A stretch of DNA of 64,000 bases from Mobula hypostoma (GCF_963921235.1 NC_086098.1:37510001-37574000); one strand, 5' to 3'; shown: positions 2,765 through 61,322, counted from the stretch's first letter. The notes: generated from the letters alone by a model not told the origin. Numbers and translations are program-made.

Positions 2765-4702
2765 ACTTCACACAAAATATTATTTCTTCCTGTCTCTGAG
2801 GCATTCATTTTGACTCCATTTTTTTGGAGGTGATTCCTTCAAGAACTGGGAACCTAACACACGAACAGAAAAACGGTGGGGACCACTATATTAAGTGAGC
2901 TCTTCCACATTTTTCTAATATGATGTCATGACAGGATTGGGGTTGGAAATTTCTGCCTTACCATTTCCATCCTCCCCTCCCTCCTAACTCCATTGTCAGA
3001 TAAACTAATAATAATTCTAAATGTGCTGTCTTATTAAAGGTGAAACTTATGAGGAAAGAACACATGTAGAGTGTTAAGAGAAACAGAATTTAACTTTCCT
3101 TCAAATATTGTCCGACTAACACTGCAGAGATCTTCAGACCATTCCAGAGCTTCTAAAGAGGTATGAGAGCCTGACATCTTCTGGGCTAATTGTGCATATT
3201 TGTTTTGGAATTAGGATTAGAAGATTAACCTCAGATATCCTTCCCTGTGACGAGGGAAGGTCAATTATCCCTGTACCATTATCTGGCCTGATTAGCTGCA
3301 TTGTGACTACTTCATATTAGAGAATAAATTACAGAAGTGTATTTAGAAGAAATAGATGAGCTGAACCTAGTATCCATTATTTTTAAAGGGCATATACTTT
3401 AATATTATTGATTTTTAAATAATATTTAATATTGATTTAATACAAAAGGGAGGAAATAACCCCATGATTCTCCCACTAATTAGAAGAGCTATGGAAACAC
3501 TGGTAAATCAGAATAGATATGTCTTCTGTGATTTCAGAGGCTATTGAAATGAAGTTGGAATGTTATTTAATGTGTTTTTACTGCTGTCATTTAGTTTGTT
3601 GAACGAGATGGAAAGCTTATCTTAATAAGGTAAAACTAACCCTTCAATACACTTCTTAAGTATTTCCATTATAAGTTCCGAGTAGAATATTTTTAATGAA
3701 AACTGTCTCATGTAGGTATTTGGCTTCTGGTTGATGTTATTTTCCTCAGTTCCTAATACGTGTTGCCAGAGGAATTTGATTTATTGAATTTCCACCCCCT
3801 TAACCGGCACTGCAAATATTTTATGGGGATGAAAGGCCCAGTGCCTTTCTCCACACCCTGCAACCTCCTATAGCCAGCCTACCTGAGTTCAAGGCAACCC
3901 TAATGGATTCAGCCAGACACTCTCCGATTCCAAGGAACAATTCTGTTTCCATCTTAAAGCAGGACCTGAACACATTTAGAGGAAAAGAAGTGACAATCCA
4001 GGAATATCTACAGCTGGTAAAATATGGGCCTGGCAGTGGGAAACCATGGCAATTTTTAATTTCAGCAACTTCCCTTGCTGACTAGAGTTGTCTCCAACAG
4101 ATTTGGGCACATCCCATGCACTGGCACAAGTCCTGGAGACAGTCTTATTATTTCAATGGCCTTACTCTCTTCAGGCCTGCCAACATTTGGACCTCTGCTG
4201 AATGACTGGCCAAAGATGAAAGTAGCATTGAAAAGACCCAAGGCTGGGGTACTGAAGGCAGATGGTGTGTGGCCAATCAATGTTTTTTTAAATTAATTGG
4301 ATGTTGATTGTAATGCTTCATGTAGATTGATGGTAGGATATCTTTCTCCCCAACCTTCATAAGACAAGCGGTCCATTGCTTTAGGGAGGAAAATGCAATG
4401 TGTTTCATGAAGCCCTAAGGAAAAGAGGCCCCTTGAATTTCATAAACAGATGATTTGGTGTGCTCGATGCACCCAGCACTGCTCTAGGATCTATTCCAAT
4501 ATTGTTCATGTTATTGGAACAACCTAAAAGACAAAGCTGTTTTTTATTCAGCAGTGCTGCAACTCACATTGGCAGAACTAAAGTCCTGCATCACAACATT
4601 TCAAAAGAAGTGTCTACGAAGATAATGGTGGTGGTCCTCCAAAATTCTATACAGAGGACATTTCTTATGGATTGAAATGAATCAAGGACAACCTCACTGT
4701 TG

Positions 4703-4767
4703 CGTTCACCAGCAACTTTTATGTGTGTTGCTTGAAATTCTGGCATCTGCAGATTGCCTCGTGTTTG
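4703..4767 (+). mobile_element. 65-bp PLE terminal insertion
   Basis: Matches the PLE 3' terminus. 14-bp direct repeat CAACCTCACTGTTG at 4689-4702 / 4768-4781. Confidence 0.8.
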
Positions 4768-6317: not shown

Positions 6318-7000
6318 AGACGCAAACAACAGGAATTTTGCAGATGCTGGAAATTCAAGCAACACACATCAAAGTTGCTGGTGAACGCAGCAGGCCAGGC
6401 AGCATCTCTAGGAAGAGGTACAGTCGACGTTTCAGGCCGAGACCCTTCGTCAGGACTAACTGAAGGAAGAGCCAGTAAGAGATTTGAAAGTGGGAGGGGG
6501 AGGGGGAGATCCAAAATGATAGAAGACAGGAGGGGAAGGGATGGAGCCAAGAGCTGGACAGGTGATTGGCAAAGGGGATATGAGAGGAGGTCCGGTGAGG
6601 AAGACAAGGGGGAGGAACCCAGAGGATGGGCAAGGGGTATAGTCAGAGGGACAGAGGGAAAAAAAGGAGAGTGAGAGAAAGAATGTGTGTATAAAAATAA
6701 ATAACGGATGGGGTATGAGGGGGAGGTGGGGCATTAGCGGAAGTTAGAGAAGTTGATGTTCATGTCATCAGGTTGGAGGCTACCCAGATGGAATATAAGG
6801 TGTTGTTCCTCCAACCTGAGTGTGGCTTCATCTTTACAGTCGAGGAGGCCGTGGATAGACATGTCAGAATGGGAATGGGACGTGGAATTAAAATGTGTGG
6901 CCACTGGGAGATCCTGCTTTCTCTGGCGGACAGAGTGTAGGTGTTCAGCAAAGCAGTCTCCCAGTCTGCATCGGGTCTTGCCAATATATAGAAGGCCACA
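6318..7000 (-). mobile_element. Penelope-like retroelement 3' part (GIY-YIG C-terminus plus terminal repeat with hammerhead)
   Basis: Close reverse complement of 2120-2760. Encodes CGLLYIGKTRCRLGDCFAEHL...LRLEEQHLIFHLGSLQPDDMNINFSNFR*. Confidence 0.9.
6421..6458 (-). ncRNA. Minimal type I hammerhead ribozyme (PLE-associated), intact
   Basis: Minus strand reads uAGUC-CUGACGA-AGG(gucucgg)CCU-GAAA-CGUC^GACUg. Stem I AGUC/GACU, 3-bp stem II, palindromic ACGU stem III, GUC cleavage triplet. Confidence 0.85.
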
Positions 7001-7650
7001 TCAGAATACTCTCAATGGTACATCTATAGAAGTAACCGCCTGTTTTAGGTGACAAACCAAATCTCCTCAAACTCCTAATGAAATATAGCTGGAGTCTTGC
7101 CTTTCTTACAGCTGTATCAATATGTTGGGACCAGATTAGATCCTCGAAGATCTTGACACCCAGGAACTAGAAACTGCTCACTCTCTCCACTTCTGATCCC
7201 TCTATGAGGATTGGTTTTTGTTCCCTTATCTCAGCCATCCTGAAGTCCACAATCAGTTCTGTGGTCTTACTGACGTTGAGCACCAGGTTGTTGCCGCGAC
7301 ACCACTCCACTAGTTGGTATATCTCGCTCCTGTACGCTCTCTTGTCACCATATGAGATTCTGCTGACAATGGTTGTATCATCTGCAAATTTATAGATGGC
7401 CTTTAAGCCTTGCCACACAGCCATGGGTGTAGAGAGAGTAGAGCAGTGGGCTAAGCACACATCCCTGAGGTGCATCAGTGTTGATTGTCAGTGAGGTGGA
7501 GATGTTATTTCCAACCTGCACAGACTGTGGTCTTCCGGTTAGAGGGCTGAGGATCCTGTTGCAGAGGGAGGTACAGAGGCCCAGGTTCTGTAACTCTGGG
7601 AATGATGGTGTTAAACGCCAAGCATTAGTTAATGAACAGCATCCTGCCAG
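7001..7650 (-). mobile_element. Rex LINE RT fragment
   Basis: [40 protein letters not shown]. Confidence 0.85.
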
Positions 7651-7887
7651 GTGTTTATCTTGCTCAAACTTGATTTCGCTCAGGCCTGATAAGCCAAATC
7701 CACTCCAAATCTGGCCCACTCACACAATGGCCGTTCCCCTTGCCCCTGCCTTATTTTTATTCACCCTTTCTAATGAATCCCGTTCACTGATTGGGTGCAG
7801 TCCAACTTTGAAAACTGCCGCGAAGAGAGAAAATGGAATAGTGTGAACAACGGATCGGCTGTTGGCAGTTTCTGTACTCAGATCGCT

Positions 7888-10777: not shown

Positions 10778-10907
10778 CATTGCAACACACACAAAATGCT
10801 GGAGGAAGTCAACAGGCCAGGCAGCATCTAGGAAAAGAGTACAGTCAATGTTTCAGGCATTTTGTGTGTGTTGCTTGGATCTCCAGCATCTGCAGATTTT
10901 CTCTTGT
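10778..10907 (+). mobile_element. PLE-derived short fold-back remnant
   Basis: GCAACACACACAAAATGC...GCATTTTGTGTGTGTTGC inverted pair plus PLE tail. 11-bp TSD TGTAAATAAAA (10767-10777 / 10908-10918). Confidence 0.8.
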
Positions 10908-12744
10908 TGTAAATAAAATGTTGATGTTCTCTGGTGCCTGGTGGTAAGCCACAAAGCACATTCCTTTGCTTTGGTAACTTTGAGGCTAGCTTGTACTAAC
11001 TCAAAAACTGAACACCGTATAGAGTATTCATTCCTATGTATAGAGTACTGATGCCTACACCACGAGCTATCGCCTTGACTTTGACTAATAGGATAGAGAG
11101 TTTATCCCTTAACTAACACACTAAATCAAGTTGTAACTTCCAGTTCACCTTATATTGGACAGAGGCCCATATCTCAGATTTACAAATATGTGAATTAATT
11201 TAGTACAAAAGTAGCAAATTAATTTGGAGAATGACTGCTGAGGAAGATAGTCAAAAGATGGAAGATGGCTTAATGAACTTGCAAATGTTAAGATAAATAT
11301 CGGGAGCAACTTGCACTGAAATTAAATCATATTCTTGATTTCACCAGTCATGAAGCTGGAACATATAATCTGTGTGACTTCTTATATTTTGTGTCCAGAT
11401 AATAAATTGCATTTGATGTCCGACCAGATATTGCCCACCAGTTCCTACAGCTGCATTGGTGAGATTTGTACGTACCTGTCAGCTGGAGAGAGTCGAGCTC
11501 TGTGATGTGGATTAGTAAAGTTAGTACTGATCTCTGTGCTTTGATCATTTTCTTCGGATGCAAACAATGGTTCCAAGAATTGAAATAGTAAATAATATTA
11601 CATTAATTTCCTCTCTCAATGCATAATCTGCTAAAAAATGAGGACTGAAGCTCCTTGATCAGGGAGTTTTCTATTTAAGTACAATCAGCTTTTCAGTCAA
11701 CAAGACCAGGAATCATTTTCATTCAATATGAACCATACTGAATTATCCAACCTCAATTGGTTCAAAGATGCATTGTGGTCGCAGAGACCACTGGGTATTG
11801 AGGAGGAATGAAAGACTATAATGCAAACCAATATTAGGTAATGTGTTTTAACTCCTGAATAGTTCTGATGGTTAGGAGTTGTCAGGTCAGTGGAAGTATA
11901 CATTGCATCAGTTAACTGTCCAAATAATCTTCTCTATTTCTGATCGGATGTACTTACACTTATCCTGGGGATTAAGCACATGGAGAAAATAGCTGACATC
12001 TATTATCTCAACATCTTAAACCTTTATGTTCCTACAAATCTTTTGCCATTTAGCAGCCTGATGTAAGACTTTTTAAAACTCTATTAAGCAGAGTTAATAC
12101 ATTTCCAGAGTTGGTGGTAATTTCTCAGCCACTTCAACAAACTTCTAATCATTTTGAACAGCTGCAAAAGATTTTCATACTGACATTGTTCTGTTTATCT
12201 TTTCATAACTAAGCTTCTTATTTCCAACATCACATTAGTGGTAACTTTTGTACTTCTCCACCTGAAACATCCAGTTCTGGCTGGAAAAAAACCTCTAATT
12301 TCTGCCTAATCTGAGATTTCTGTAATTTAGTATAACCTCTTCTATTGTGCATTCAGCATCCTTGTTTAGAGAAATCCAGAATTACTCATCTTTTTTTTTC
12401 TTATAACCTTATCAGCAGTCTCCCACTAGCATACAAACTTATTTGATGCTCTATTTACTTATCATTGGCTGTAAAATTAATCTCCTTATTTCTCACCCTT
12501 TCTCTACCTTTCACTAGTCATCCAGTCTATCAGCCTATGTATGATGCTATTTACACTTCTCCTTTCACTTTCCTTATTTTAAAGTTTACTTTCATGGTTC
12601 TCACAACATAGACGAAGGCGTCTAAACATTAGGTCAATGCCTGTTTGCAGAACGATCCCATCCATCCTCTTTCCTCACTTATTTCCTGGTAACCACTTCG
12701 GTCTCAAATGCTCAACTCCCTCTTGATCGCTCTGCCCGTCCCCC

Positions 12745-28366: not shown

Positions 28367-29223
28367 CTGTGAGGAACGAGGTAAAAAAAAAATTAACCTG
28401 TACGGTGTTCCTCTTAAACATCATTTTATGTATAATTAGAATAGCTGTCAGGATCCGGGGGGGGGGGGGGTGGGGGCAGGGGGACATTAAAGTACCAAAG
28501 AAAACATGCCACAAAATTAATGCCTGGGAGAATAATTTTTGTGGCATTCTCCTGTGGTCTCCCGTTATAATAGCGGCATAAAATTGGTTGAATTCTTGCA
28601 GATTTAGCATAATCAGCTATTTGTGTGACTCCTCTCCCAAAGCTACTGTAAGAGACCTGAAGAACTGGGTACAGATTATAGATACCCACATCATGGCTCT
28701 AAGTTATGAGGAAAACCTTCAACAAATTTTAAGCCTGAAAGTGATATTCTCAGAACCAAAGAAAGGAAGAGCCCTTAGGGCTCCCTATCATGCTGGCTTG
28801 TCTTTGGAATGGGCTAGCAAAACCATTAATCTCTTGGTGGAAATGATTCCAGATCCCTTCATTCTTGAATAAGAAGGCCCAAAAGTGGTCACATGATTAA
28901 ACCTGACAATCCATGATGTCATGTTATGAATAGTCTTGAAAATGTTTACAATAGAAAATAATCTTTTGGCCCATATGATTTTTCAGACTGATCTCTTGAG
29001 AATTATTAATCTTTCTACAAATGTTTTTATATTTAATAAATACAAGGAAGTAGAATAGGAAGCAGCTGCTTTGAGGGACGGGGGATATGGATCTGAATTT
29101 AAAGAGGTAGTTCCTCCCCCCCCCCCCAAGGCAGTGCAGAAAAAAAACTTGTAACAAAGAGAAGTGTCAGAGCAATTGATTTAATCTACTTTTTTTTTAA
29201 AAAAAGAGCATTTGAGCATGATA

Positions 29224-29445
29224 ACACACACAATGCTGGAGGAACTCAGCAGGCCAGGCAGCATGTGTGGAAAAGAGTAAAAAGTTGACATTTCTTCTGA
29301 GACCCTTCCTCAAGATCCTTCATTCTGATAAAGGGTCTCGGCCTGAAACATTAACTGTTTACTCTTTTCCATAGATGCTGTCTGGTCTGCTGAGATCCTC
29401 CAGCATTTTGTGTGTCTTGCTTTGGATTTTCAGCATCTGCAGATG
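29224..29445 (+). mobile_element. Older PLE-derived fold-back element with two decayed hammerheads
   Basis: Imperfect inverted arms about 29224-29315 / 29322-29415. Core decayed to CTGATAA..GAAACATT. Same TCAGCATCTGCAGA tail as other copies. Confidence 0.8.
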
Positions 29446-30105: not shown

Positions 30106-30238
30106 GCAACACACATAAAAATTGCTGGTGAACGCAGCAGGCCAGGCAGCATCTATAGGAAGAGGTACAGTCGACATTTCGGGCCGAGACCCTTCGTCAG
30201 GACTAACTGAAAGAAGAGACAGTAAGAGATTTGAAAGT
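30106..30238 (-). mobile_element. PLE terminal fragment with near-intact hammerhead (30168-30205), inserted in a CR1 3' fragment
   Basis: Minus strand reads AGUC-CUGACGA-AGGGucucggCCC-GAAA-UGUC-GACU, with one C>U change in stem III. CR1 sequence continues on both sides (about 29980-30105 and 30239-30410). Confidence 0.8.
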
Positions 30239-33200
30239 AGGTGTTTTTTATACAGAGAGTGGTAAGAGCATAGAATGCACTGCCAGGGATGGTGGGAGAG
30301 GCAGATACATTAGGGACATTTAAGATACTCTTAGATGGGCAAATAGATGAAAGATAAACAGAGGGTTTAGTTTGATCTTGGTTAAGAGGTCCTTGTACTA
30401 TGTACTGCTCTAAAAAAAATTGCCCATTTCGAGTTTATTGTCATCTGACTGTACATACATACAGCCAAATGAAGCTACGTCGTTCAGACCTCGGTGCACC
30501 CACAAAACATATACCACACACACCACATAAAACAATATATCAGCACAAATAAGTTCATAAAATGTAATTCAAAATTCATGTGTCGTTTGCAGCACAGGTA
30601 AGCCGTGAAGAGTGAACAGCTTGCTGTCCTGGTGCTGAGATCTTGGTGGTGGCAGGGTATTCATCAGTCTCACAGTCTGGGGGAAGAAGCTGCTGCCCAG
30701 TCTGAGGCCGGCTCCTGCAGCCCCTTGTTAAAATGGGGCCCGGAGTCTTCATGCCTCAATCTCCGCAGAAAGTGTAGACTCGCTGTGACTTTTTGACTAA
30801 TGAGGAGGCAGTGTGAGTCCAGGCTAAATCATTCATTACGTGCACACCCAGGAACTTTGTGCTCTTCATGGCAGAGCCATTGATGTGCAATGGAGGGTGG
30901 TCAACCTGAACCTTCCTGAAGTCCACAGTCACCTCTTGTGTCTTGTCCACGTTGAGGCTTGGGTTCTTCTTGCACCATTTGACAAGCCTCTCCACCTTCT
31001 CACTGTCTGATGGCTCATCATTGTTGCCGATGAGGCCAACCACTGTTGCATCACCAGCAAACCAGATGTGGTTTGAGCTGGTTCCAGCAGTGCAGCCCAG
31101 AGTCAGCAGCGTGAATAGCAGCGGGTGTTGCTGCCAACTCAGACTGACTGGGCACTTTCCAGCAAGATGCCCAGCATCTAGTTACAGAGAGGGGTGTAGA
31201 GTCCCAACAAGGACATTTCACCCACCACCCTCCCCACCAAGCCTCTGAGGGATGATCATGTTAAACGCCGAGCTGAAATTGTTGAACAACATTCCGGCAT
31301 ATAAGGCATCGTTTTCGAGGTGAGAAAGGACAGAATAGAGGGGTGAGGCTATGGCAATGTCAGTGTACAGTACCAGTTTGAGAAATAGGTGAACTGGAAA
31401 GGGTCCAATGAAGGTGGAATTTTGTAGGATCCATTAACAGCCTCTCAAAGAACTTCATGATTGTTGAGGTCAGTGCCACTGGGGAGTAAGATGTTGAATC
31501 CTTGTGGGTTGAGTTAAGAACCTGCAAGGGTAGAAGGACCCTGATGGCAGTTATATACAGTGGCTGGGAGGTGGACCACAGATTACAACAGGAAATAGAA
31601 AAGGCGTGTCAAAAGGGCAATGTTATGATAGTCATGGGAGATTTCAACATGCAGGTCGATTGGGAAAATCAGGTTGGAAATGGATCTCAAGAGAGTGAGT
31701 TTGTTGAATGCCCACGAGATGGCTTTTTAGAGCAGTTTGTCATTGAGCCTACTAGGGATCAGCTATACAGGATTGGGTGTTACATAATGAACCGGAGGTG
31801 ATTAGGGAGCTTAAGGTAAAAGAACTCTGAGGAGGCAGTGATTACAATATAATTGAGTTCAGCTTGAAATTTGATAGGGAAAAAGTGAAGTCTGGTGTAG
31901 TAGTATTTCAGTGGAGTAAAAGAAATTACAGTGATATGAGAGAGTAGTTGGCCAAAGTAAATTGGAAGGAGATGCTGGCAGGGATGTCAGCAGAGCAGCA
32001 ATGGTGTGCGTTTCTGGGGAAAAATGAGGAAGGTGCAGGACAGATGTACTCCAAAAACAAAGAAATACTCAAATGGCAAAATAATACAACTGTGGCTGAC
32101 AAGGGGAGTCAAAGCTAATGTAAAAGCAAAAGAGAGGGCATACGACAAAGCAAAAATTAGCAGAAACAGAGAGGATTGAGAAGCTTTGAAAACCCTACAA
32201 AGTGCATCTAAAAGAATCATTAGGAGGTAAAAGATGAAATATGAAAGCAAGCTAGCAAACAATATCCAAGTGGATGTTAAAAACTTTTTCAGGTATGTAA
32301 GAAATAAAAGAGAGTCGAGTGTGGATATAGGACCACTAGAAAATGAGGCAGGAGAAATAATAACAGGGGCCAAGGAGATGGCAGGTGACCTAAATGAGTA
32401 TTTTGCATCAGTCTTCACTTTGGAAGACACTGGCAGTGTGGCAGATGTTGAAGGGTGTGAAAGAAGAGAAGTGAGCACTGTTACTGTAACAAGGGGATAA
32501 ATGTTCAAAGAGCTGAAAGACCTAAGGATACATTAGTCACCTGGGCCAGATGAACTGCACCCGAGGGTTCTGAAAGAGGTAGTGGTAGAGATTGTGGAGG
32601 CATTAATAATGATCTTTCAAAAATCATTGGACTCTGGCATGGTGCCAGAGGACTGGAAAATTGCAAATGTTATTCCACTCCTTAAGAATGGGGAAAGGCA
32701 GCAGAAAGGAAATTATAGACCAGTTAGCCTGACCTCAGTGGTTGGGAAGATGTTGGAGTCAATTCTTAAGGATGAGGTGATGGAGTACTTGGTGACACAG
32801 GACAAGATAGGACAAAGTCAGCATGGTTTCCTTAAAAGAAAATTTTGCCCGATGAATCTGTTGGAACTCTTTGAGGAGATTATATGTAGGATATATAAAG
32901 GGGATGCAGTGGATGTTGTATATTTGGATTTTCAGAAGGCCTTTGACAAGGTGTTACATATGAGGCTGCTTTCCAAGTTAAGAGCCCATGGTATTACAGG
33001 AAAGTTACTAACATGGTTAGAGCATAGAGCGAGTGGGAATATAAAGGATCCTTTTCTGCTTGGCTGCCAGTGACTGGTAGTGTTCCGCGGGGGTCATTGT
33101 TGGGACCACTTTTTTAATGTTGTATATCAATGATTTAGATGATGGAATAGATGGCTTTGTTGCCAAATTTACAGATGATACGAAGATTGGTGTGTGTGTG

Positions 33201-33639: not shown

Positions 33640-35246
33640 ATAGAAACATAGAAACATAGAAAATAGGTGCAGAAGTAGGCCATTCGGCCCTTCGAGCCTG
33701 CACCACCATTTATTGTGATCATGGCTGATCATCCAACTCAGAAACCTGCACCAGCCTTCCCTCCATACTCTCTGATCCCCGTAGCCACAAGGGCCATATC
33801 TAACTCCCTCTTAAATATAGCCAATGAACTGGCCTCAACTGTTTCCTGTGGCAGAGAATTCCACAGATTCACCACTCTCTGTGTGAAGAAGTTTTTCCTA
33901 ATCTCAGTCCTAAAAGGCTTCCCCTTTATCCTCAAACTGTGACCCCTCGTTCTGGACTTCCCCAACATCGGGAACAATCTTCCTGCATCTAGCCTGTCCA
34001 ATCCCTTTAGGATTTTATACGTTTCAATCAGATCCCCCCTCAATCTTCTAAATTCCAACGAGTACAAGCCTAGTTCATCCAGTCTTTCTTCATATGAAAG
34101 TCCTGCCATCCCAAGAATCAATCTGGTGAACCTTCTTTGTACTCCCTCTATGGCAAGGATGTCTTTCCTCAGATTAGGGGACCAAAACTGCACACAATAC
34201 TCCAGGTGTGGTCTCACCAAGGCCTTGTACAACCGCAGTAGTACCTCCCTGCTCCTGTACTCGAATCCTCTCGCTATAAATGCCAGCATACCATTCGCCT
34301 TTTTCACCGCCTGCTGTACCTGCATGCCCACTTTCAATGACTGGTGTATAATGACACCCAGGTCTCGTTGCACCTCCCCTTTTCCTAATCGGCCAACATT
34401 CAGATAATAATCTGTTTTCCTATTTTTGCCACCAAAGTGGATAACTTCACATTGATCCACATTAAATTGCATCTGCCATGAATTTGCCCACTCACCCAAC
34501 CTATCCAAGTCACCCTGCATCCTCTTAGCATCCTCCTCACAGCTAACACTGCTGCCCAGCTTCGTGTCATCCGCAAACTTGGAGATGCTGCATTTAATTC
34601 CCTCATCCACGTCATTAATATATATTGTAAACAACTGGGGTCCCAGCACTGAGCCTTGCAGTACCCCACTAGTCACTGCCTGCCATTCTGAAAAGGTCCC
34701 GTTTATTCCCACTCTTTGCTTCCTGTCTGCTAACCAATTCTCTATCCACATCAATACCTTACCCCCAATACCGTGTGCTTTAAGTTTGCACACTAATCTC
34801 CTGTGTGGGACCTTGTCAAAAGCCTTTTGAAAATCCAAATATACCACATCCACTGGTTCTCCCCTATCCACTCTACTAGTTACATCCTCAAAAAATTCTA
34901 TGAAATTCGTCAGACATGATTTTCCTTTCACAAATCCATGCTGACTTTGTCCGATGATTTCACCGCTTTCCAAATGTGCTGTTATCACATCTTTGATAAC
35001 TGACTCCAGCAGTTTCCCCACCACCGACGTTAGGCTAACCGGTCTATAATTCCCCGGTTTCTCTCTCCCTCCGTTTTTAAAAAGTGGGGTTACATTAGCC
35101 ACCCTCCAATCCTCAGGAACTAGTCCAGAATCGAACGAGTTTTAAAAAATTATCACTAATGCATCCACTATTTCTTGGGCTACTTCCTTAAGCACTCTGG
35201 GATGCAGACCATCTGGCCCTGGGGATTTATCTGCCTTTAATCCCTT
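33640..35246 (-). mobile_element. Young CR1 LINE, 5'-truncated, nested antisense in an older CR1
   Basis: RT ORF plus 3' UTR hairpin and (TTTCTATG)n tail at 33640-33663. Host CR1 sequence is contiguous across it. Confidence 0.92.
33738..35102 (-). CDS. CR1 LINE ORF2 reverse transcriptase (5'-truncated, 454 aa uninterrupted)
   Basis: Motifs NYRPVSLTSVVGKLLE, QHGF, VYLDFQKAFDKV, QGSVLGP, KFADD, LVRPHLEYCVQFWSP, RGDLIETYKI, TRGHSL. The frame extends upstream to about 35245 (KSPGPDGLHPRVLKE) with a single TAA. Confidence 0.95.
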   Translation of the reverse strand: MANVTPLFKNGGREKPGNYRPVSLTSVVGKLLESVIKDVITAHLESGEIIGQSQHGFVKGKSCLTNFIEFFEDVTSRVDRGEPVDVVYLDFQKAFDKVPHRRLVCKLKAHGIGGKVLMWIENWLADRKQRVGINGTFSEWQAVTSGVLQGSVLGPQLFTIYINDVDEGIKCSISKFADDTKLGSSVSCEEDAKRMQGDLDRLGEWANSWQMQFNVDQCEVIHFGGKNRKTDYYLNVGRLGKGEVQRDLGVIIHQSLKVGMQVQQAVKKANGMLAFIARGFEYRSREVLLRLYKALVRPHLEYCVQFWSPNLRKDILAIEGVQRRFTRLILGMAGLSYEERLDELGLYSLEFRRLRGDLIETYKILKGLDRLDAGRLFPMLGKSRTRGHSLRIKGKPFRTEIRKNFFTQRVVNLWNSLPQETVEASSLAIFKRELDMALVATGIREYGGKAGAGF

Positions 35247-38179: not shown

Positions 38180-41100
38180 ATCAGAATCAGCTTTATTATC
38201 ACTGGCATGTGACGTGAAATTTATTAACTTAGCAGCAGCTGTTCAATGCAATACATAATACAGAAGGGGAAAAAAACAAAATAAAATAATAACAACAACT
38301 AAATCAATTACGGTATACGTATATTGAATAGATTAAAAATCGTGCAAAAGAACAGAAATACTATATATTAAAAAAAGTGAGGTAGTGTCCAAGGGTTCAA
38401 TGTCCATTTAGGAATCAGATGGCAGAGTGAAAGAAGCTGTTCCTGAATCACTGAGTGTGTGCCTTCAGGCTTCTGTACCTCCTACCTGATGGTAACGGTG
38501 AGAAAAGGGCATACCCTGGGTGCTGGAGGTCCTTAATAATGGACACTGCCTTTCTGAGACACTGCTCCCTGAAGATGTCCTGGGTACTTTGTAGGATAGT
38601 ACCCAAGATGGAGCCGACTAAATTTACAACCCTCTGCAGCTTCTTTCTGTCCTGTGTAGTAGCCCCCCCCCCCATACCAGACAGTGATGCAGCCTGTCAG
38701 AATACTCTCCACGGTACATCTATAGAAGTTTTTGAGTGTATTTCAAACTCTTCAAACACCTAATGAAGTATAGCTGCTGTCTTGCCTTCTTTATAACTGC
38801 ATCGATATTTGGGACCAGATTAGATCCTCAGAGATCTTGACACCCAGGAACTTGAAGCTGCTCACTCTCTCCACTTCTGATCCCTCTATGAGGATTGGTA
38901 TGTGATCCTTCATCTTACCCTTCTGGAAGTCCACAATCAGCTCTTTTGTCTTACTGACGTTGAGTGCCAGGTTGTGCTGCATATCTCACTCCTGTATGTC
39001 CTCTCGTCACTACCTGAGATTCTACCAACAATGGTTGTATCGTCAGCAAATTTATAGATGGTATTTGAGCTATGTCTAGCCACAGAGTCATGTGTACATT
39101 GAGAGTAGAGCAGTGGGCTAAGTACACACCCCTGTGGTGCACCAGTGTTGATCGTCAGCGAGGAGGAGAATTTATCACTAACCCGCACAGAATGTGGTCT
39201 TCTGGTTAGGAAGTCGAGGATCCAATGCAGAGGGAGGTACAGAGGCCCAGGTTCTGCAACTTCTCAATCAGGATTGTGGGAATGATATTAAATGCTGAGC
39301 TATAGTCGATGAACTGCATCCTGACATAGGTATTTGTGTTGTCCAGGTGGTCTAGAAACATAGAAACATAGAAAACCTACAGCACAGTACAGTCCCTTCG
39401 GCCCACAGAGTTGTGCCAAACATGTCCCTACCTTAGAAATTACTAAGGCTTACCTATAGCCCTCTATTTTTCTAAGCTCCATGTACCTATCCAGGAGCCT
39501 CTTAAGGTATCCGCCTCCACCACCATTGCTGACAGCCCATTCCACGCACTCACCACTTTCTGCGTAAAAAACTTACATCTCCTCTGTACCTTAAAACTGT
39601 GCCCTCTTGTGGCAGCCATTTCAGCCCTGGGAAAAAGCCTCTGACTATCCACATGATCAATGCCTCTCATCATCTTATACACCTCTGTCAGGTCACCTCT
39701 CATCCTCCATCGCTCCAAGGAGAAAAGGCTGAGTTCACTCAACCTGTTTTCATAAGGCATGCTCCCCAATCCAGGCAACATCCTTGTAAATCTCCTCTGC
39801 ACCCTTTCTATGGTTTCCACATCATTCCTGTAGTGAGGCGACCAGAACTGAGCACAGTACTCCAAGTGGGGTCTGACCAGGGTCCTATAAAGCTATAACA
39901 TTACCTCTCGGCTCCTAAATTCAATTCCACGATTGATGATGGCCAATACACCGTATGCCTTCTTAACCACAGAGCCAACCTGTGTAGCTGCTTTGAGTGT
40001 CCTATGCACTCAGACCCCAAGATCCTTCTGGTCCTCCACACTGCCAAGAGTCTTACCATTAATACAGGTACTATATTCTGCCATCATATTTGACCTACCA
40101 AAATTAACCACTTCACACTTATCTGAGTTGAGACTTATCTGGGTTCACACTTATCACATCTAAAGCCGTGTGGAGAGCCACGTTTGCCGTTGACCTATTG
40201 TGGCGATAGGCAAATTGCAATGGGTCCAGGTCCTTGCTGAGGCAGGAGTTCAGTTTAGCCATGACCAACCTCTCAAGACATTTCATCACAATAGATGTGA
40301 ATGCTACCGGGCGATAGTCATTAAGGCAGCTCACATTATTCTTCTTAGGTACTGGTATAATTGCTGCCTTTTTGAAGCAAGTGAGAACTTCCGCTCGTAG
40401 CAGTGAGAGGTTGAAAGTGTCCTTGAATACTCCTGCCAATTGGTTGGCACAGGTTTTCAGAGCCTTACTCCATCAAGACCTTTTGCCTTGCGAGGGTTCA
40501 CTCTCTTTAAAGACAGCCTGACATCGGCCTAAGAAACAGAGATCACAGGGTCATCAGGTGCAGCAGGGATCTTCACAGCTGTAGTTGTGTTCTCCCTTTC
40601 AAAGCGGGCATAGAAGACATTGAGTTCATCTGGTAGTGAAGCATCGCTGCCATTCATGCTGTTGGGTTTCGCTTTGTAGGAAGTAATGTCTTGCAGACCC
40701 TGCCAGAGTTGCTGTGCATCCGATGTCACCTCCAACCTTGGAAATTGTCTCTTCACCCTTGAAATAGCCCTCCACAAATCATACCTGGTTTTCTGGTACG
40801 GGCCTGGGTCACTAGACTTGAATGCCACAGATCTGGCCTTCAGCAGATGACGTACCTCCTGGTTCATCCACAGCTTTTAGTTTGGGAATGTGCAGTAAGT
40901 CTTTGTGGGCACACACGCATCCACACAGGTTTTAATGAAGTTGCTAACAACTGCAGCATACTCATCCAGATTCGAAGATGAATCCCTGAATACAGTCCAG
41001 TCCACCAATTCAAAGCAGTCCTGTAGGCGCTCCTGTGCTTCCCGTGTCCAAACCTTCTTGGTCCTCACTACTGGTGCTGCAGACTTCAGTCTCTGCCTAT

Positions 41101-44754: not shown

Positions 44755-45160
44755 ATTCTCTGATGAATTTCAAGTCGCTGACCCTCTCCACCTCTGACCC
44801 TCTGATGAGGACTGGCTCGTGGCCCTCTGGTTTCCTTCTCCTGAAGTCAACAATCAGCTCCTTGGTCTTGCTGACACTGACTGAGAGCTTGTTACTGCGG
44901 CACCACTCACCCAGATTTTTAATTTCCCTCCTATATGCTGATCCAGCCAGCAACAGTGGTGTTGTCAGCAAACTTATGTATGGCATTAGCCTCACAGTCG
45001 TAAGTGTAAAGTGAGCAGAACAGGGGGCTACGCACACAGCCCTGTGGTGCACCTGTGCTGATGGAGATTGTGGTGGTGATGTTGTTCCCAGTCTGAAATG
45101 ACTGGGGTCTGCAAGTGTGGAAATTGAGGATTCAAGTTCACGAGGAGGTATTGAGGCCAA
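44755..45160 (-). mobile_element. Rex RT fragment
   Basis: [35 protein letters not shown]. Confidence 0.8.
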
Positions 45161-45334
45161 GTTTCTCCTGCAAATGCCTCATGAAATATTGCTCCAAAAT
45201 TGATTAAGCCATGATCTGCTGAAAGACAGGGATTTGCTTAAAGCCATCGAGATGTACTCCCAGTGCTGTGTTGATCCTTCTGTTATTGTAACTACTGTAG
45301 ATGTTAAGACTATCAGTGATGCAGCAAGACAGGA

Positions 45335-48524: not shown

Positions 48525-48905
48525 CACTCAGTGGCCATTTTATTAGCTATTCCTGTACACCTGCTCATTAAGACCATAAGACACAGGAGCAGAATTAGGC
48601 CATTTGCCCCATCGAGTCTGCTCTACCATTCAATCATAGCTGAAATAAAGCAAATATCTAATCCCCCAATTGTGAGACAGTAACTCAATGCATAAAGGCA
48701 TGCCGACGTGGATGAGACGTTCAGATAAGATTGTGGAAGAAATGTAATCTAAGTGACTTTGACTGTGGAATGATTGTTGGTACCAAATGGGGTGGCTTTA
48801 GTGTCTCAGAAACTGCTGATCTCCTGTGATATTTTTTTTCCACACACAACATTTGCTATAGTTTACAGAGAATGATATAAAAAGCAAATAAATCAGTAAG
48901 CTGTT
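48525..48905 (+). mobile_element. Tc1/mariner DNA transposon 5' fragment with a CR1 tail inserted (about 48569-48643)
   Basis: TIR-like CACTCAGTGGCCATTTTATTAG and a decayed transposase N-terminus KKCNLSDFDCGMIVG..SVSETADLL..VYRE. Confidence 0.7.
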
Positions 48906-49294
48906 TCCAAGATGGATTTCCAGCAATTTGCAGAAACTCTTGTGTTTATGGTATCCCACTTGTTGTCTTGGTGGTTCTCCAGTTTGAACACTCACAGCAA
49001 TGTAACCCCCTGCTCACACCACACGCTGCTGAGCTGGGAGTCTGGTTCAGTTCCCTGACCCCTGTGCAACAGCTGCACTCATTCACCCCGATTCAGAGTG
49101 AGTGGCTTCAGCCCGACCCACATGGTGAGCGTCTCTCTCGTCGTCTGATAGAAGCTGCTGCCTACGCTGGTTTCCTCCACGCCAGAAACCTCTCCACTGG
49201 GACAAAGCTTGGTGGTGGTTGTCAGCTATTGGGCTTCACACATCAAAGTTGCTGGTGAACGCAGCAGGCCAGGCAGCATCTCTGGGAAGAGGTA

Positions 49295-49332
49295 CAGTCG
49301 ACGTTTCGGGCCGAGACCCTTCGTCAGGACTA
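49295..49332 (-). ncRNA. Minimal type I hammerhead ribozyme, intact (mirror copy)
   Basis: Exact reverse complement of 49365-49402. Confidence 0.85.
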
Positions 49333-49364
49333 ACTGAAGGTGAAACTGAATTGCTTCCTTCAGT

Positions 49365-49402
49365 TAGTCCTGACGAAGGGTCTCGGCCCGAAACGTCGAC
49401 TG
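49365..49402 (+). ncRNA. Minimal type I hammerhead ribozyme, intact
   Basis: AGUC(49366-69) CUGACGA(49370-76) A GGG-ucucgg-CCC GAAA(49390-93) CGUC^ GACU(49398-401). Predicted cleavage after 49397. Confidence 0.85.
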
Positions 49403-49934
49403 TACCTCTTCCCAGAGATGCTGCCTGGCCTGCTGCGTTCACCAGCAACTTTGATGTGTGTTGCTTGAATTTCCAGCATCTGCAGAATTCCTCGTGTTTA
49501 AGCTATTGGGCTTGTTGGCCTGGGCTGGAAAGAACTGAGCAGCTGAACGGAGATGGGAAAGACCATGTCCAGCAGGGGTGGGTGAAGAGGAAGAGATAGG
49601 ATCTGGGTAGACTATCAGCACCTGGAGCATCTTTGCCAGGCCCTTTCAATGTGGGTCACAGCGCTGAACCCCACAACTCAGAATGCGCAAAAACACGCTA
49701 GCCCCAGCCTGCCCAACACTCGCCCTCGCAGACAGCCGCTCCACTCTGAGCCGTGGGTGACCCATTGCTGGATTTGCACCAAGTACCCTGCACTGTTAAA
49801 CTGTCAGTCGTGCATCTACAACCTTTAATAACCCCTTTCATCGTTGTTTCCACTAGAACACATCCTATGCACTGAGCTACAAATGCATTAACCTGGGCCT
49901 TCTCTGTCCACACACTGTGCCTGATCTATTTTCA

Positions 49935-50765
49935 AAAAGAGAATCCAGGTTTATTATCACTGAAACATATTAAGAGATTTGATGCTTTGTGGCAGCAATA
50001 CAGTGCAAGACATAAAAATTATTATAAGCTGCAAAATAAATAGTGCAAAAGACAAGAGGTGAGATACTGTTCACGGAGCATTCAGAAATCAGATGACAGC
50101 GGGAACAGTGTTCTTGAAATACTGATTGTGGGTCATCAGGCTGGTAGTAACATGAAGAAAGCATGTATCAGATGGTGAGGGTCTTTAATGATGGATACCA
50201 TATGCTTGGGGCACCACCTCTTAGAGATGTCCTCAATGGTGAGCAGGGTAGTGACTGTGATCCAACTGGCTGAATCTACAAATGGCTGGAGTTTAGTTAT
50301 CAAATGCTGACATAAAATGGTTCCTTACATTATCAACTCAGCCTTCACTTGGTTATATTACTGGGGGTTATTTGTACCTGAAATGATGCAACTAATCTGC
50401 AGCCTCTTACATTGGTTGCATCACAGAATGTTATAGTGTCTCCAATCAGAATGCTCTCCAGCATACATCTCCAGAAATTTGCAAGAGTCCTTGGTGACAT
50501 ACCAAATCTCCTCAAACTCCTAATGAAGCAGAGGCTTTGGCCTGCCTTCGTTGTGATTGCGTCAGGATCCTGAGCCCAGAATGGATCCCCTGAGTTGTTG
50601 ACACCAAGGAATTTAACGCTGCTCGTCCTTTGCACTGCTGACCCCTCAAGGAGGAATGGTGAGTGTTCTCCTGACCTCCCCTTGAAGTCCACAACCAATT
50701 CCTTGGTCTTACCGACATTAAATGCGAGGCTGTGCTGCAACACCAACCAGCCAGCCTATTTAACC
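49935..50765 (-). mobile_element. Rex 3' part with a foreign insert
   Basis: NVGKTKELVVDF..KFLGV..RSLRRFGMSP..ESIL. Confidence 0.8.
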
Positions 50766-56734: not shown

Positions 56735-58205
56735 TGGCAAATTGGTGCCTCACTAAATTCTTTGGGATGTATTCAAGGATTCACCTTCGAATCTGAATGA
56801 ATTATGCCACAGTCATCACCGACTTCATTGAGACCTATGTGAATGAGTGTGTGCCTTCAGGAACATGCCAACCATATCCAGACCAGGAGATTCACCTACT
56901 TCTTCATTCCCAGGAGGGAATCTGTGTGGGAGGCACGTTTTGTATACCTCCCCCCCTCAACCAATTGGAAAACCAGAGATACCCCAGAGCACCACAGAGA
57001 TTCACAGTCTGCTGGGACTAGATCTGCGGCGTTCAATGCCGGCAATCCAGAACCCTGCAAGAAGTCCAGGGACAACCGACAGAAGGCCAGCATAAAGGCA
57101 ATCCCATATGAAGTTAGGGCCACAGTCGGATGCATAACATCTGTGGTAGGGATGATATGCCATTATTTCCTATAAGGCAAAACCTAATATTATAGATGAA
57201 TGTGATGCTTCACTCTCCAAAAGGGAGAATAAAATTACACCTGTGCGGATCTACACCGCATTTGGTGACCCTTGACCCCTTGATTTCCGATTGGAGGCTG
57301 AAGTCACAGCAACTTTCAGGAGGGTGAATCTGACAAGGCATCAAGCCCTGATGGTGTACCTGGTAGGGTACTGAACATCTGTGCCAGCTAACTGGCTGCA
57401 GAGTTTAAGGACTGCTGAATTTGGAGCTTCCCACATGCTTTGAAAGGACATTAATCGTACTGATGCCCAAAAAAGAGCAGGGAGAGCTTCCTCAGTGGCT
57501 GTCACCCGATAGCACTTGCACCTACTCTGATGAAACGTTTTAAGAGGTTGGTTATGGCCAGAATTAGCCCCTGCCGAAGAAAGATCCAGGCTCTTTCCAA
57601 TTTGCTTACCGCCACTACAGGCCTATAGCAGATACAATCTCACTGCCTCTCCACTTGGCCTTGGACCATCTGGACAACAGCAGTCACCTTGTCAGGCTGC
57701 TGCACATTCAGTACAGCTCGGCGTTCAACACCATCTTACCTTCAGTACTAGTCAACAAGTTTCCAAGCCTGACTACACCCATGACTGTGTGGCTAGGCAC
57801 AGCACCAGTGCTCTCTACGTTCACTGGTGACACTTCGGTCGTTAGCAGAATCTCGGATTGTATCGAGGGGGCGTAGAGGGACGAGACAGATCAGCTGGCT
57901 GAGTGGTGTCGCACCAACAACCTGGAATTCAACATCAGTAAGACCTGATTGGAACTGATTGTGGGCCTCAGGAGGGGAAGGTAGGTTGGAAGAACATGCA
58001 CCAGTCCTCATCCAACAGTCAGTAGTGAAAAGAGTGAGCAGCTTCAAGTCCCTGGGCATCGAATCTCGGAAGATCAATCTTGGGCACAAGTTGATGCAAA
58101 CATGAGGAAGGCACACATTTAGAAGTTTGAGGAGGTTTGCTATGTCACCAAAAAAATCTAGCAAATTTCTACAGATGTACAGTGGAGAACATTCTGACTG
58201 GCACA
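56735..58205 (+). mobile_element. Rex LINE remnant, heavily decayed
   Basis: YATVITDFIETYV, ALDHLDNS..YSSAFNTI. Homologous to the reverse complement of 38900-41000. Confidence 0.75.
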
Positions 58206-58228
58206 AAAACAAGAAATTACAGGACGTA

Positions 58229-58356
58229 AACAACAGGAATTCTGCAGATGCTGGAAATTCCTGACGAAGGGTCTCTGCCTGAAACGTCGACTGCACCTCT
58301 TCCTAGAGATGCTGCCTGGCCTGCTGCGTTCACCAGCAACTTTGATGTATGTTGTT
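58229..58356. mobile_element. PLE terminal fragment with internal inversion; hammerhead core at 58261-58293 (+)
   Basis: Antisense terminus (58229-58260) is fused to sense CTGACGA-AGG..CCT-GAAACGTC-GACTG. TSD AATTA(C/G)AGGACGTA at 58215-58228 / 58357-58370. Confidence 0.8.
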
Positions 58357-61162: not shown

Positions 61163-61322
61163 ATGCAACACACACAAAGTGCTGGAGGAACTCAGCAGGT
61201 CAGGCAGCATCCATGGAAAAGAATAAACAGTTGATATTTTGGGCTGAGACCCTTCATTAGGAGTGGAAAGCGGTGGGGCAGTGGAGGGGGGCAGTTTCCA
61301 GCATCTGCAGAATATCTTGTGC
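61163..61322. mobile_element. PLE-derived insertion (decayed hammerhead) inside a Rex 3' tail
   Basis: ACACACACAAAGTGCTGGAGGAACTCAGCAGG...GAGACCCTTCATTAGGA...TTTCCAGCATCTGCAGA. Confidence 0.7.

What the first reader, a model, noticed from the sequence alone, without database searches (positions are those of the whole stretch)
49237..49500. Perfect 104-bp fold-back carrying an intact hammerhead ribozyme on each strand
Seen: a 264-bp insertion with a perfect 13-bp TSD and identical inverted arms that share a variant (CTCTGGG versus CTCTAGG at about 6406), so one arm was probably copied from the other at insertion. Each strand encodes AGUC-CUGACGA-A-GGG(ucucgg)CCC-GAAACGUC^GACU. Established: this is the minimal type I hammerhead of Penelope-like elements. 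Inference: whichever strand is transcribed, the antisense arm is made first and the ribozyme second, so the RNA should fold into a 104-bp duplex that locks its own ribozyme. That duplex is an ADAR/Dicer substrate, so such cassettes could be a self-generated source of siRNAs against the PLE family, and a cruciform-prone site in DNA.
Basis: partly seen in the sequence, partly recalled or inferred. Interest (0 to 1): 0.8.

Follow-up and report, generated by a model that had tools for sequence, protein, structure and literature searches.

The report
Fold-back Penelope retrotransposon tail insertion
This 264-base hairpin-shaped insert is the ordinary by-product of one insertion of the tail end of a Penelope-like jumping gene, laid down once in each direction, and not a new ribozyme device or a demonstrated RNA-silencing source.

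Summary
Two 104-nt arms (49237-49340, 49357-49460) are 100% complementary. They are separated by 16 nt, followed by a 40-nt one-sided tail (49461-49500), and flanked by a perfect 13-bp target-site duplication. Each strand carries one complete minimal hammerhead motif.

It is a heavily 5'-truncated insertion of a Penelope-like element (PLE). A decayed autonomous copy in the same window (6324-7719, minus strand) has reverse transcriptase, then GIY-YIG endonuclease, then the same hammerhead and tail. Four other copies here also have a tail-less inverted piece joined to a tailed forward piece.

This shape is published for PLEs (PMC8557442) and explained by the enzyme nicking and extending both DNA strands from two RT start sites (PMC11167929).

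The fold-back centre and both junctions are present in reads of two species labels, so it is neither an assembly artefact nor brand new.

No RNA run holds the loop words. The siRNA idea is untested here and was already described for Penelope in Drosophila (PMC3681739). The minimal hammerhead needs a second sense copy, so "self-locking" adds little.

The scan had already found the same structure elsewhere in this genome.

The parts
49224..49236 (.). Left copy of the 13-bp target-site duplication AGCTATTGGGCTT
   Evidence: Exact direct repeat D2
49237..49340 (-). Inverted, tail-less copy of the PLE 3' end (reference positions 295-398 of the 3' region of the copy at 6324-6760). It starts at the family's tail-less RT start site.
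   Evidence: BLAST to the reference copy, 98.1%; 100% complementary to 49357-49460
49296..49331 (-). Minimal hammerhead motif on the minus strand, predicted cut after 49300
   Evidence: Regex hit 49300-49327 on -; mirror of the plus-strand motif
49341..49353 (.). 13-nt junction filler TGAAACTGAATTG that is not family sequence. It repeats AACTGAA from the adjacent arm end.
   Evidence: Family contigs diverge upstream of 49354 (loose ends). BLAST homology of the forward copy starts at 49354. The filler is unique in the window.
49354..49460 (+). Forward copy of the PLE 3' end (reference 292-398), 3 nt longer at its 5' end than the inverted copy
   Evidence: BLAST 96.6% over 49354-49499
49366..49401 (+). 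Minimal hammerhead motif on the plus strand, predicted cut between 49397 and 49398
   Evidence: Regex hit 49370-49397; criteria of PMC4209133
49444..49465 (+). Stem-loop AGCAAC/GUUGCU with a 10-nt loop. The tail-less end (49460) falls at the loop/3'-stem boundary. It matches the published 'AC-rich stem loop' RT initiation site (AC-rich as cDNA).
   Evidence: MFE of the single arm plus tail; PMC11167929
49461..49500 (+). One-sided 40-nt PLE tail, present only on the forward copy
   Evidence: No inverted partner. The same tail follows the forward parts of copies at 6324, 2755, 4766, 10908, 58228 and 61321.
49501..49513 (.). Right copy of the 13-bp target-site duplication
6324..7719 (-). Decayed longer copy of the same family that identifies it as a PLE. 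RT pieces lie at 7393-7719 and 7170-7487. A thumb-like piece lies at 6948-7166. A GIY-YIG endonuclease piece lies at 6737-7000. The 3' region 6324-6736 carries the same hammerhead and tail.
   Evidence: RVT_1 weak; PF09004 4e-07; homologues at 59-69% identity; 10 of 16 aligned sequences match PF01541
29223..29443 (.). Older fold-back insertion of the same family, with arms now 86% complementary

Best explanation
This is the dead product of one retrotransposition event of a very abundant Penelope-like element (canonical type: RT followed by a C-terminal GIY-YIG endonuclease).

Only the last ~150 nt of the element RNA were copied: the minimal hammerhead, the RT-initiation stem-loop and the tail.

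Inferred mechanism:
1. The PLE endonuclease made staggered nicks 13 bp apart.
2. The bottom-strand 3'-OH primed reverse transcription at the distal RT start site. This gave the forward copy with the 40-nt tail.
3. The top-strand 3'-OH primed a second reverse transcription at the proximal (tail-less) start site. This gave the inverted copy.
4. Both cDNAs ran to nearly the same 5' point of a short template (reference 292 and 295).
5. Their ends were joined by template switching or repair, leaving a 13-nt filler with a 7-nt templated duplication.

Because both arms came from the same RNA species, they were identical at birth. They carry a hammerhead on each strand simply because one arm is the reverse complement of the other.

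Shown: the anatomy, the family identity, the recurrence of this architecture, and presence in two species labels.

Inferred: which nick primed which copy, and how the ends were joined.

No function is needed. A read-through transcript would form a long hairpin, but there is no evidence here that this happens or matters.
For: Anatomy: perfect arms, a one-sided 40-nt tail and a 13-bp TSD.

Family identity: the copy at 6324-7719(-) has RT pieces, then a GIY-YIG piece, then the same 3' region.

Recurrence: copies at 29223-29443, 58228-58354, 61165-61321 and 10782-10908 all consist of an inverted piece ending at reference 400-402 (tail-less) joined to a forward piece carrying the tail. Three of the four show recognisable flanking target duplications (about 11-14 bp, with mismatches); none is evident at 61165-61321. 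In three of them the forward piece is only 33-49 nt, so the inverted piece cannot be a copy of it.

Other copies: a forward-only copy at 4697-4766 also has a 13-bp TSD. A forward copy at 30106 ends tail-less. Together these show two discrete 3' ends.

Literature:
- PLE insertions often have an adjacent inverted 5'-truncated copy and a 30-40 bp tail at one end only (PMC8557442).
- Purified PLE protein cleaves and extends both strands. It initiates RT at two internal sites in an AC-rich stem-loop, and the tail is the sequence between them (PMC11167929).

The shared rare variant at 49284/49413 is held by about 5-6% of family depth.

Both junctions and the loop words are present in DNA of organisms A and B.
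Against: - Two independent primings do not by themselves predict that both copies stop within 3 nt of each other (reference 292 vs 295). That needs a short template RNA with a defined 5' end, or a snap-back step, and neither was shown.
- The PLE assignment rests on a frame-broken copy. Its own endonuclease piece does not reach Pfam significance; only its close homologues do.
- No Rfam hammerhead model matches.
- No contig spans the whole palindrome.
- The mechanism is carried over from an anole PLE studied in vitro, not from this family.
Confidence: 0.8

Rival explanations
1. Snap-back. A single cDNA primed at the tailed start site folded back at its 3' end and was copied on itself, so one arm is a literal copy of the other.
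For: The arms are identical. Their inner ends coincide within 3 nt. The filler repeats AACTGAA from the arm end, as expected for a slipped self-priming step.
Against: Self-copying should run on through the 40-nt tail into the target, but the inverted arm stops at the family's tail-less end. Three other copies have inverted pieces far longer than their forward pieces, which snap-back cannot produce.
Confidence: 0.12
2. Re-copied unit. The 264-nt fold-back already existed elsewhere, was transcribed, and was retrotransposed as a whole, making it a hairpin-shaped non-autonomous PLE passenger.
For: An earlier follow-up on this genome (s1-141886) reported a similar unit that seems to be copied many times. 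In one search several fold-back joints of other copies have contig depths tens of times the single-copy depth.
Against: The filler is unique in this window. The loop words are held only by the two organisms that share the orthologous locus (only 2 sampled words). The RNA 5' end would have to coincide with the outer end of the inverted arm. RT would have to traverse a 104-bp perfect RNA duplex.
Confidence: 0.05
3. Functional hairpin-RNA locus. The cassette is transcribed and diced or edited, giving siRNAs that repress the PLE family.
For: The predicted RNA is a perfect 104-bp duplex. Inverted Penelope copies yield siRNAs in transformed Drosophila melanogaster (PMC3681739). Flanks are weakly represented in one RNA library of organism B, which could be DNA carry-over.
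Against: None of six RNA runs holds the loop-spanning words. The RNA run of the source species has zero depth on the unique flanks. No small-RNA data could be examined. With so many family copies, one hairpin would add little. No promoter is evident.
Confidence: 0.05
4. The palindrome is an assembly or library artefact, such as a chimeric fold-back read.
For: No single contig spans the palindrome. PLE tandem and inverted structures are known to trouble assemblies.
Against: Both junctions and the loop-spanning words occur in several runs of two different organisms. The unit is enclosed by a perfect TSD. The same architecture recurs with diverged arms at 29223-29443.
Confidence: 0.02
5. It is a MITE or Foldback-type DNA transposon, or a retrozyme/viroid-like element with ribozymes of both polarities.
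For: It has long terminal inverted sequence, small size, and a hammerhead motif on each strand.
Against: The ends are asymmetric, with a tail on one side only. The TSD is 13 bp here and about 11-14 bp in other copies. The arms are the 3' end of an RT plus GIY-YIG element. Forward-only 5'-truncated copies carry TSDs. There are no tandem direct hammerheads, which retrozymes need. The 'both polarities' is exact reverse complementarity, not two different ribozymes.
Confidence: 0.01

Closest known systems
Canonical EN+ Penelope-like element insertions with an adjacent inverted 5'-truncated copy and a one-sided 30-40 bp tail (Evgen'ev and Arkhipova 2005; Craig et al. 2021, PMC8557442)
   Same: An inverted tail-less copy abuts a forward tailed copy. 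The tail is 40 nt. One TSD encloses the unit. A hammerhead lies in the terminal region. The family has RT plus a C-terminal GIY-YIG.
   Different: Only ~150 nt of the element were copied, so the two truncated copies make almost the whole insert and form a near-complete palindrome. No ORF or pLTR tandem is present in this copy.
Two-strand cleavage and extension, and dual internal RT start sites, of the anole PLE PAc in vitro (Frangieh et al. 2024, PMC11167929)
   Same: There are two discrete 3' ends 38-40 nt apart. The proximal one sits in a stem-loop that is AC-rich as cDNA. There is no sign that hammerhead-cleaved RNA was the template: no copy starts at the predicted cut site.
   Different: That work saw no difference in start-site use between strands. 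Here the inverted piece is tail-less and the forward piece tailed in 5 of 5 composite copies. The joining step was not reconstituted there.
Minimal hammerhead ribozymes of PLE terminal repeats (Cervera and de la Pena 2014, PMC4209133)
   Same: [quoted passage not shown]
   Different: Activity was not tested. The two motifs here are on opposite strands, so they cannot form the sense-sense dimer within one transcript.
L1 5' inversions by twin priming (Ostertag and Kazazian 2001; from my own knowledge, not checked here)
   Same: Both nicked target strands prime reverse transcription, giving an inverted 5' part and a direct 3' part within one TSD.
   Different: In L1 the inverted part comes from RNA upstream of the direct part. 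Here both parts copy the same RNA segment, starting from two dedicated start sites.
siRNAs from rearranged Penelope copies with long inverted repeats in Drosophila (Rozhkov et al. 2010; review PMC3681739)
   Different: That was shown with small-RNA data in flies. Nothing of the kind was observable here.

Membership tests
Penelope-like element (canonical EN+ type) | Single ORF with RT followed by a C-terminal GIY-YIG endonuclease in autonomous family members | tested here: met
   Copy at 6324-7719(-). RT pieces score RVT_1 at E 0.0014 and 0.011, with FADD in place of YxDD. A downstream piece at 6737-7000 has the motif LYIGKT..R..EH. Its homologues at 59-69% identity match PF01541 in 10 of 16 aligned sequences, best E 4.4e-4. 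Atlas score is 0.94 to GIY-YIG clusters. The frames are broken, so the evidence comes from pieces.
Penelope-like element (canonical EN+ type) | [quoted passage not shown] | tested here: met
   The 40-nt tail at 49461-49500 has no inverted partner. The same tail is on the forward parts of six other copies. One forward copy ends tail-less.
Penelope-like element (canonical EN+ type) | Inverted 5'-truncated copy immediately adjacent to the 5' end, inside the same target duplication | tested here: met
   49237-49340 against 49354-49500, within the 13-bp TSD. Four further composite copies lie in the window; three of them show flanking duplications.
Penelope-like element (canonical EN+ type) | Partial tandem arrangement forming pseudo-LTRs | not tested
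   This copy is too short to show it. No full-length tandem copy was found in the 64-kb window.
Minimal type I hammerhead of PLEs | Conserved core CUGANGA ... GAAA ... cleavage triplet NUH | tested here: met
   CUGACGA, GAAA and GUC at 49370-49397 on + and 49300-49327 on -
Minimal type I hammerhead of PLEs | [quoted passage not shown] | tested here: met
   A at 49377; helix II GGGU/GCCC with G10.1-C11.1; ACGU at 49393-49396. In about half of family depth C11.1 has decayed to U at a CpG (49389 C>T).
Minimal type I hammerhead of PLEs | Self-cleavage, as a dimer or protein-assisted | not testable with these tools
   The monomer MFE is a rod that pairs GACG of the core with CGUC: -13.5 against -9.5 kcal/mol for the competent fold. 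Published single motifs are inactive.
Rfam hammerhead families (type I, II, III, HH9, HH10) | Score at or above the gathering threshold of the covariance model | tested here: not met
   No hammerhead model appears even at E<=10 in 48700-50000, and none at gathering score in the whole window. This is expected for a motif without helix III. Hence it is filed under the minimal PLE variant, not the Rfam families.
microRNA precursor families (MIR6136, mir-5681, mir-617, mir-961) | Score at or above the gathering threshold | tested here: not met
   78.6 bits against a threshold of 99, 49.5 against 88, 47.6 against 80, and 45.3 against 100. These are generic long-hairpin matches.
MITE / Foldback DNA transposon | Symmetric terminal inverted repeats reaching both ends, and a fixed short TSD typical of a transposase superfamily | tested here: not met
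   One end carries a 40-nt unpaired tail. The TSD is 13 bp here and about 11-14 bp in other copies. The arms are the 3' end of a retroelement.
Animal retrozyme | Tandem direct repeats delimited by hammerheads of the same polarity, giving circular RNA | tested here: not met
   There is a single inverted pair and no direct hammerhead repeat within the unit. Circular RNA is not testable here.

The most novel reading that the evidence does not exclude
The near-coincident inner ends of both arms (reference 292/295) may be more than chance. Fold-back joints and short-copy starts also pile up genome-wide at the 5' edge of the hammerhead. Together these could mean that this PLE family makes a discrete short RNA (hammerhead plus RT-start stem-loop plus tail, ~100-150 nt) with a defined 5' end. 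The enzyme would copy this RNA from both nicked strands, so mini fold-backs would be a regular, sequence-programmed product. Some of them might then be re-copied as hairpin units, or feed small-RNA pathways in this cartilaginous fish.
Probability: 0.12. Interest if true: 0.45.

Novelty: already known. Interest (0 to 1): 0.15.

Why it matters
It matters little as a discovery. The fold-back, the one-sided tail and the minimal hammerhead are all published hallmarks of Penelope-like elements, and siRNA production from inverted Penelope copies has been reported in flies.

The locus is useful in three limited ways:
- It is a clean natural illustration of the in vitro finding that a PLE enzyme extends both target strands from two RT start sites.
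- It shows that a perfect 104-bp palindrome with a 16-nt spacer has persisted in two species labels whose flanks differ by about 1.5%.
- It is a reminder for annotation that such hairpins attract false microRNA-model matches.

Tried and rejected
- Rfam at a permissive threshold found no hammerhead family, only sub-threshold microRNA hairpin models. Gathering thresholds over the whole window found nothing.
- Pfam and PDB searches with the window's own endonuclease piece found nothing. A PDB profile search gave only a chance ribosomal-protein hit. GIY-YIG identity came from homologues and the Atlas.
- Logan contigs could not bridge the palindrome. I therefore used loop-spanning words instead, of which only 2 were sampled.
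- Gene conversion between arms: with flanks 1.5% diverged between organisms A and B, about 1.6 arm-to-arm differences are expected since the split at a uniform rate. The chance of seeing none is about 0.2, so perfect identity needs no special explanation. The old fold-back at 29223-29443 has arms at 86%, which also argues against homogenisation.
- Hammerhead-cleaved RNA as the template: no copy starts at the predicted cut site (reference 336).
- The RNAcofold dimer gave an extended duplex rather than the catalytic dimer, so it was not informative.
- A 2026 preprint on animal retrozymes as PLE passengers has nothing on inverted or tail structures.

Full report
**Observation.**
- Positions 49237-49340 and 49357-49460 are 104-nt arms with 100% complementarity, separated by 16 nt.
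- Positions 49461-49500 are a further 40 nt with no inverted partner.
- AGCTATTGGGCTT is repeated exactly at 49224-49236 and 49501-49513.
- The motif AGUC-CUGACGA-A-GGGU(cucg)GCCC-GAA-ACGU-C^GACU lies at 49366-49401 on the plus strand. Its mirror lies at 49296-49331 on the minus strand.
- As RNA the 264 nt fold into one hairpin of -233 kcal/mol, z = -31.
- A single arm with the tail folds no better than shuffles (z = -1.1).

**What the repeat is.** BLAST of the insert against the window finds about nine further copies.
- The copy at 6324-6469 on the minus strand continues upstream for more than 1 kb and is homologous to other dispersed fragments.
- Stop-to-stop translation of that copy gives reverse-transcriptase pieces at 7393-7719 and 7170-7487. 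They score RVT_1 at E 0.0014 and 0.011 and include a FADD motif.
- It also gives a piece at 6948-7166 that matches PF09004 at 4e-07.
- Downstream of these, at 6737-7000, is a piece reading ..LYIGKT..R..EH...
- The protein atlas places that last piece with GIY-YIG clusters (score 0.94, 190 shared features).
- Fifteen homologues at 59-69% identity restore the missing N-terminal VVY..C..C half. Ten of the 16 aligned sequences match Pfam GIY-YIG, best E 4.4e-4.
- RT followed by a C-terminal GIY-YIG endonuclease defines canonical Penelope-like elements (PLEs).
- About 410 nt of 3' region follow the ORF and contain the same hammerhead and the same tail.
- The insert at 49237-49500 is therefore made only of the last ~150 nt of a PLE.

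**The architecture recurs.** Positions below use the 3' region of the 6324 copy as reference (1-437). On that scale the hammerhead starts at 304, the cut follows 335, the arm ends at 398, and the tail runs 399-437.

| Copy (window coordinates) | Inverted piece (ref) | Forward piece (ref) |
|---|---|---|
| 49237-49500 (this insert) | 295-398 | 292-437 |
| 29223-29443 | 306-400 | 308-422 |
| 58228-58354 | 306-401 | 405-437 |
| 10782-10908 | 324-402 | 388-436 |
| 61165-61321 | ends at 402 | tail only |
| 4697-4766 | none | 368-437, with its own 13-bp TSD |
| 30106-30241 | none | 267-402, ends tail-less |

- In five of five composite copies the inverted piece is tail-less and the forward piece carries the tail. 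Apart from the copy at 61165-61321, target duplications enclose the whole composite.
- In three of them the forward piece is far shorter than the inverted one. The inverted piece therefore cannot have been copied from the forward one.
- The only two close-range long inverted repeats in the 64-kb window are fold-backs of this family.

**Agreement with the literature.**
- Craig et al. 2021 (PMC8557442) state that PLE insertions are highly 5'-truncated. They often have an inverted 5'-truncated copy immediately adjacent, forming inverted repeats. A 30-40 bp tail is often present at one end only.
- Frangieh et al. 2024 (PMC11167929) purified an anole PLE protein. [quoted passage not shown] Reverse transcription starts at two adjacent internal sites in an AC-rich stem-loop. 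The genomic tail is the sequence between those two sites.
- Here the tail-less end (49460) falls at the loop/3'-stem boundary of the AGCAAC/GUUGCU stem-loop (49444-49465). As cDNA this reads CACACATCAAAG.
- That paper also found that hammerhead-cleaved RNA is not the preferred template. Consistent with this, no copy here begins at the predicted cut site.

**The hammerhead.** No Rfam hammerhead model scores even at E<=10. The motif nevertheless meets the criteria Cervera and de la Pena 2014 give for PLE minimal hammerheads (PMC4209133):
- the conserved core;
- a G10.1-C11.1 pair;
- a 4-5 bp helix I;
- a palindromic 15.2-16.2 (ACGU).

That paper reports no detectable cleavage of single motifs and low activity as dimers. 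The monomer here prefers a rod that pairs GACG of the core with CGUC: -13.5 against -9.5 kcal/mol for the competent fold. A fold-back transcript contains one sense and one antisense motif, so it cannot form a sense-sense dimer in cis. The hairpin "locking" the ribozyme therefore adds nothing to an already inactive monomer. Among the window's copies only the two arms of this insert keep every core position. The others show CpG decay, for example C11.1 to U in about half of family depth.

**Read evidence.**
- Contigs of the source sample (organism A, run X1) cross the left junction (48801-49259) and the right junction (49478-49950) with no differences.
- Contigs of organism B (run X5) cross the same two junctions. 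They show 8 and 6 substitutions in about 930 bp of flank, roughly 1.5%.
- Words spanning the loop are held by DNA runs of both organisms.
- The fold-back is therefore not an assembly artefact, and it predates the separation of the two labels.
- At that divergence about 1.6 arm-to-arm differences would be expected. Finding none has a probability near 0.2, so it is unremarkable.
- The family is extremely abundant. Summed word depth on the arms is in the millions, against 13-14 on the flanks. This is not a copy number.
- The arm variant at 49284/49413 is the minority state, at about 5-6% of family depth. This shows that both arms derive from the same source lineage.
- RNA: the source-species RNA run has zero depth on the unique flanks.
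- An organism B RNA run has thin coverage of the flanks (depth 4-6), which may be nascent RNA or DNA carry-over.
- None of six RNA runs holds the loop words.
- Small RNAs and editing could not be examined.

**The junction.**
- Family contigs diverge from this copy upstream of 49354 (loose ends). The forward copy therefore starts at 49354, and 49341-49353 (TGAAACTGAATTG) is filler.
- The filler repeats AACTGAA from the adjacent arm end. This looks like an abortive templated step during template switching or end joining (inference).
- The two copies stop within 3 nt of each other (reference 292 and 295).
- The best-supported joints of other genomic copies run from 49326-49333 to 49366-49373. These are fold-back junctions at the 5' edge of the hammerhead.
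- The inverted pieces at 29223 and 58259 end there too.
- An earlier follow-up on another window of this genome (s1-141983) independently noted that short copies start at the ribozyme's edge.
- This suggests a preferred 5' end of the template, which I could not explain. The string just upstream resembles a 3' splice site.

**Mechanism and rivals.**
- Most likely (about 0.8 for identity and overall scheme) this is one PLE insertion in which both nicked strands primed reverse transcription of the same short RNA species. One priming used the tailed start site and the other the tail-less one. The two cDNA ends were then joined.
- Snap-back self-copying (0.12) explains the coincident inner ends. 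It does not explain the tail-less outer end, nor the copies with very short forward parts.
- Re-copying of a pre-existing hairpin (0.05) is not supported for this loop. Earlier notes (s1-141886) suggest it for another such unit.
- A functional siRNA or ADAR hairpin (0.05 for this locus) is untested. As an idea it is not new: Penelope copies with long inverted repeats give siRNAs mapping to the inverted regions in transformed D. melanogaster (PMC3681739).
- An assembly artefact, and a MITE or retrozyme reading, are effectively excluded.

**Verdict.** The thing is an ordinary instance of a known kind. The scan has already met and explained the same structure in other pieces of this genome (s1-141946, s1-141886), which earlier notes say is a devil ray. 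Interest is 0.15.

Noticed in passing
window 49297-49399 (both strands): The Rfam microRNA model MIR6136 (a Panax ginseng family) matches the fold-back centre at 78.6 bits (threshold 99). It shares actual letters, not just pairing: GUCGAC-GUUUCGG, GACGA..GG and CCGAAAC-GUCG. The model consensus itself therefore resembles an inverted repeat of a minimal-hammerhead-like motif. That 'microRNA' family may derive from a similar retroelement fold-back.
   Followed up: partly
window 49326-49333 joined to 49366-49373 in other genomic copies; in-window 29315, 58259: Fold-back junctions and 5' ends of short copies pile up at the 5' edge of the hammerhead (reference 302-311). Some identical joints have contig depths tens of times single-copy depth. 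Immediately upstream the family reads like a 3' splice site (TCTCTTACTGGCTCTTCCTTCAG|TT). The cause of the preferred end is unexplained.
   Followed up: partly
window 29223-29443: An older fold-back insertion of the same family has arms that are now only 86% complementary over 71 nt and decayed hammerhead cores. The arms of such palindromes therefore diverge with age rather than being homogenised.
   Followed up: yes
window 49294 (and family-wide): A>G at this arm position makes up 3.5-3.8% of family depth in the two DNA runs but 13.4-13.5% in the two RNA runs (table 3). This could reflect preferential expression of a subfamily or editing. No other site shows the pattern.
   Followed up: no
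window 33738-35102 (-): The longest ORF in the window (454 aa) has a clear reverse-transcriptase domain (RVT_1, E 4.6e-31). It belongs to another retroelement that I did not classify. PLE RT fragments also lie at 38697-39341, 44777-45166, 50445-50745 and 57773-58197, so the neighbourhood is rich in transposable elements.
   Followed up: no
window 48824-49210 and 49657-49833: An RNA library of organism B has thin contigs (depth 4-6) on the unique flanks, carrying organism B's alleles. The source-species RNA run has none. This is either low-level, perhaps intronic, transcription or DNA carry-over.
   Followed up: no
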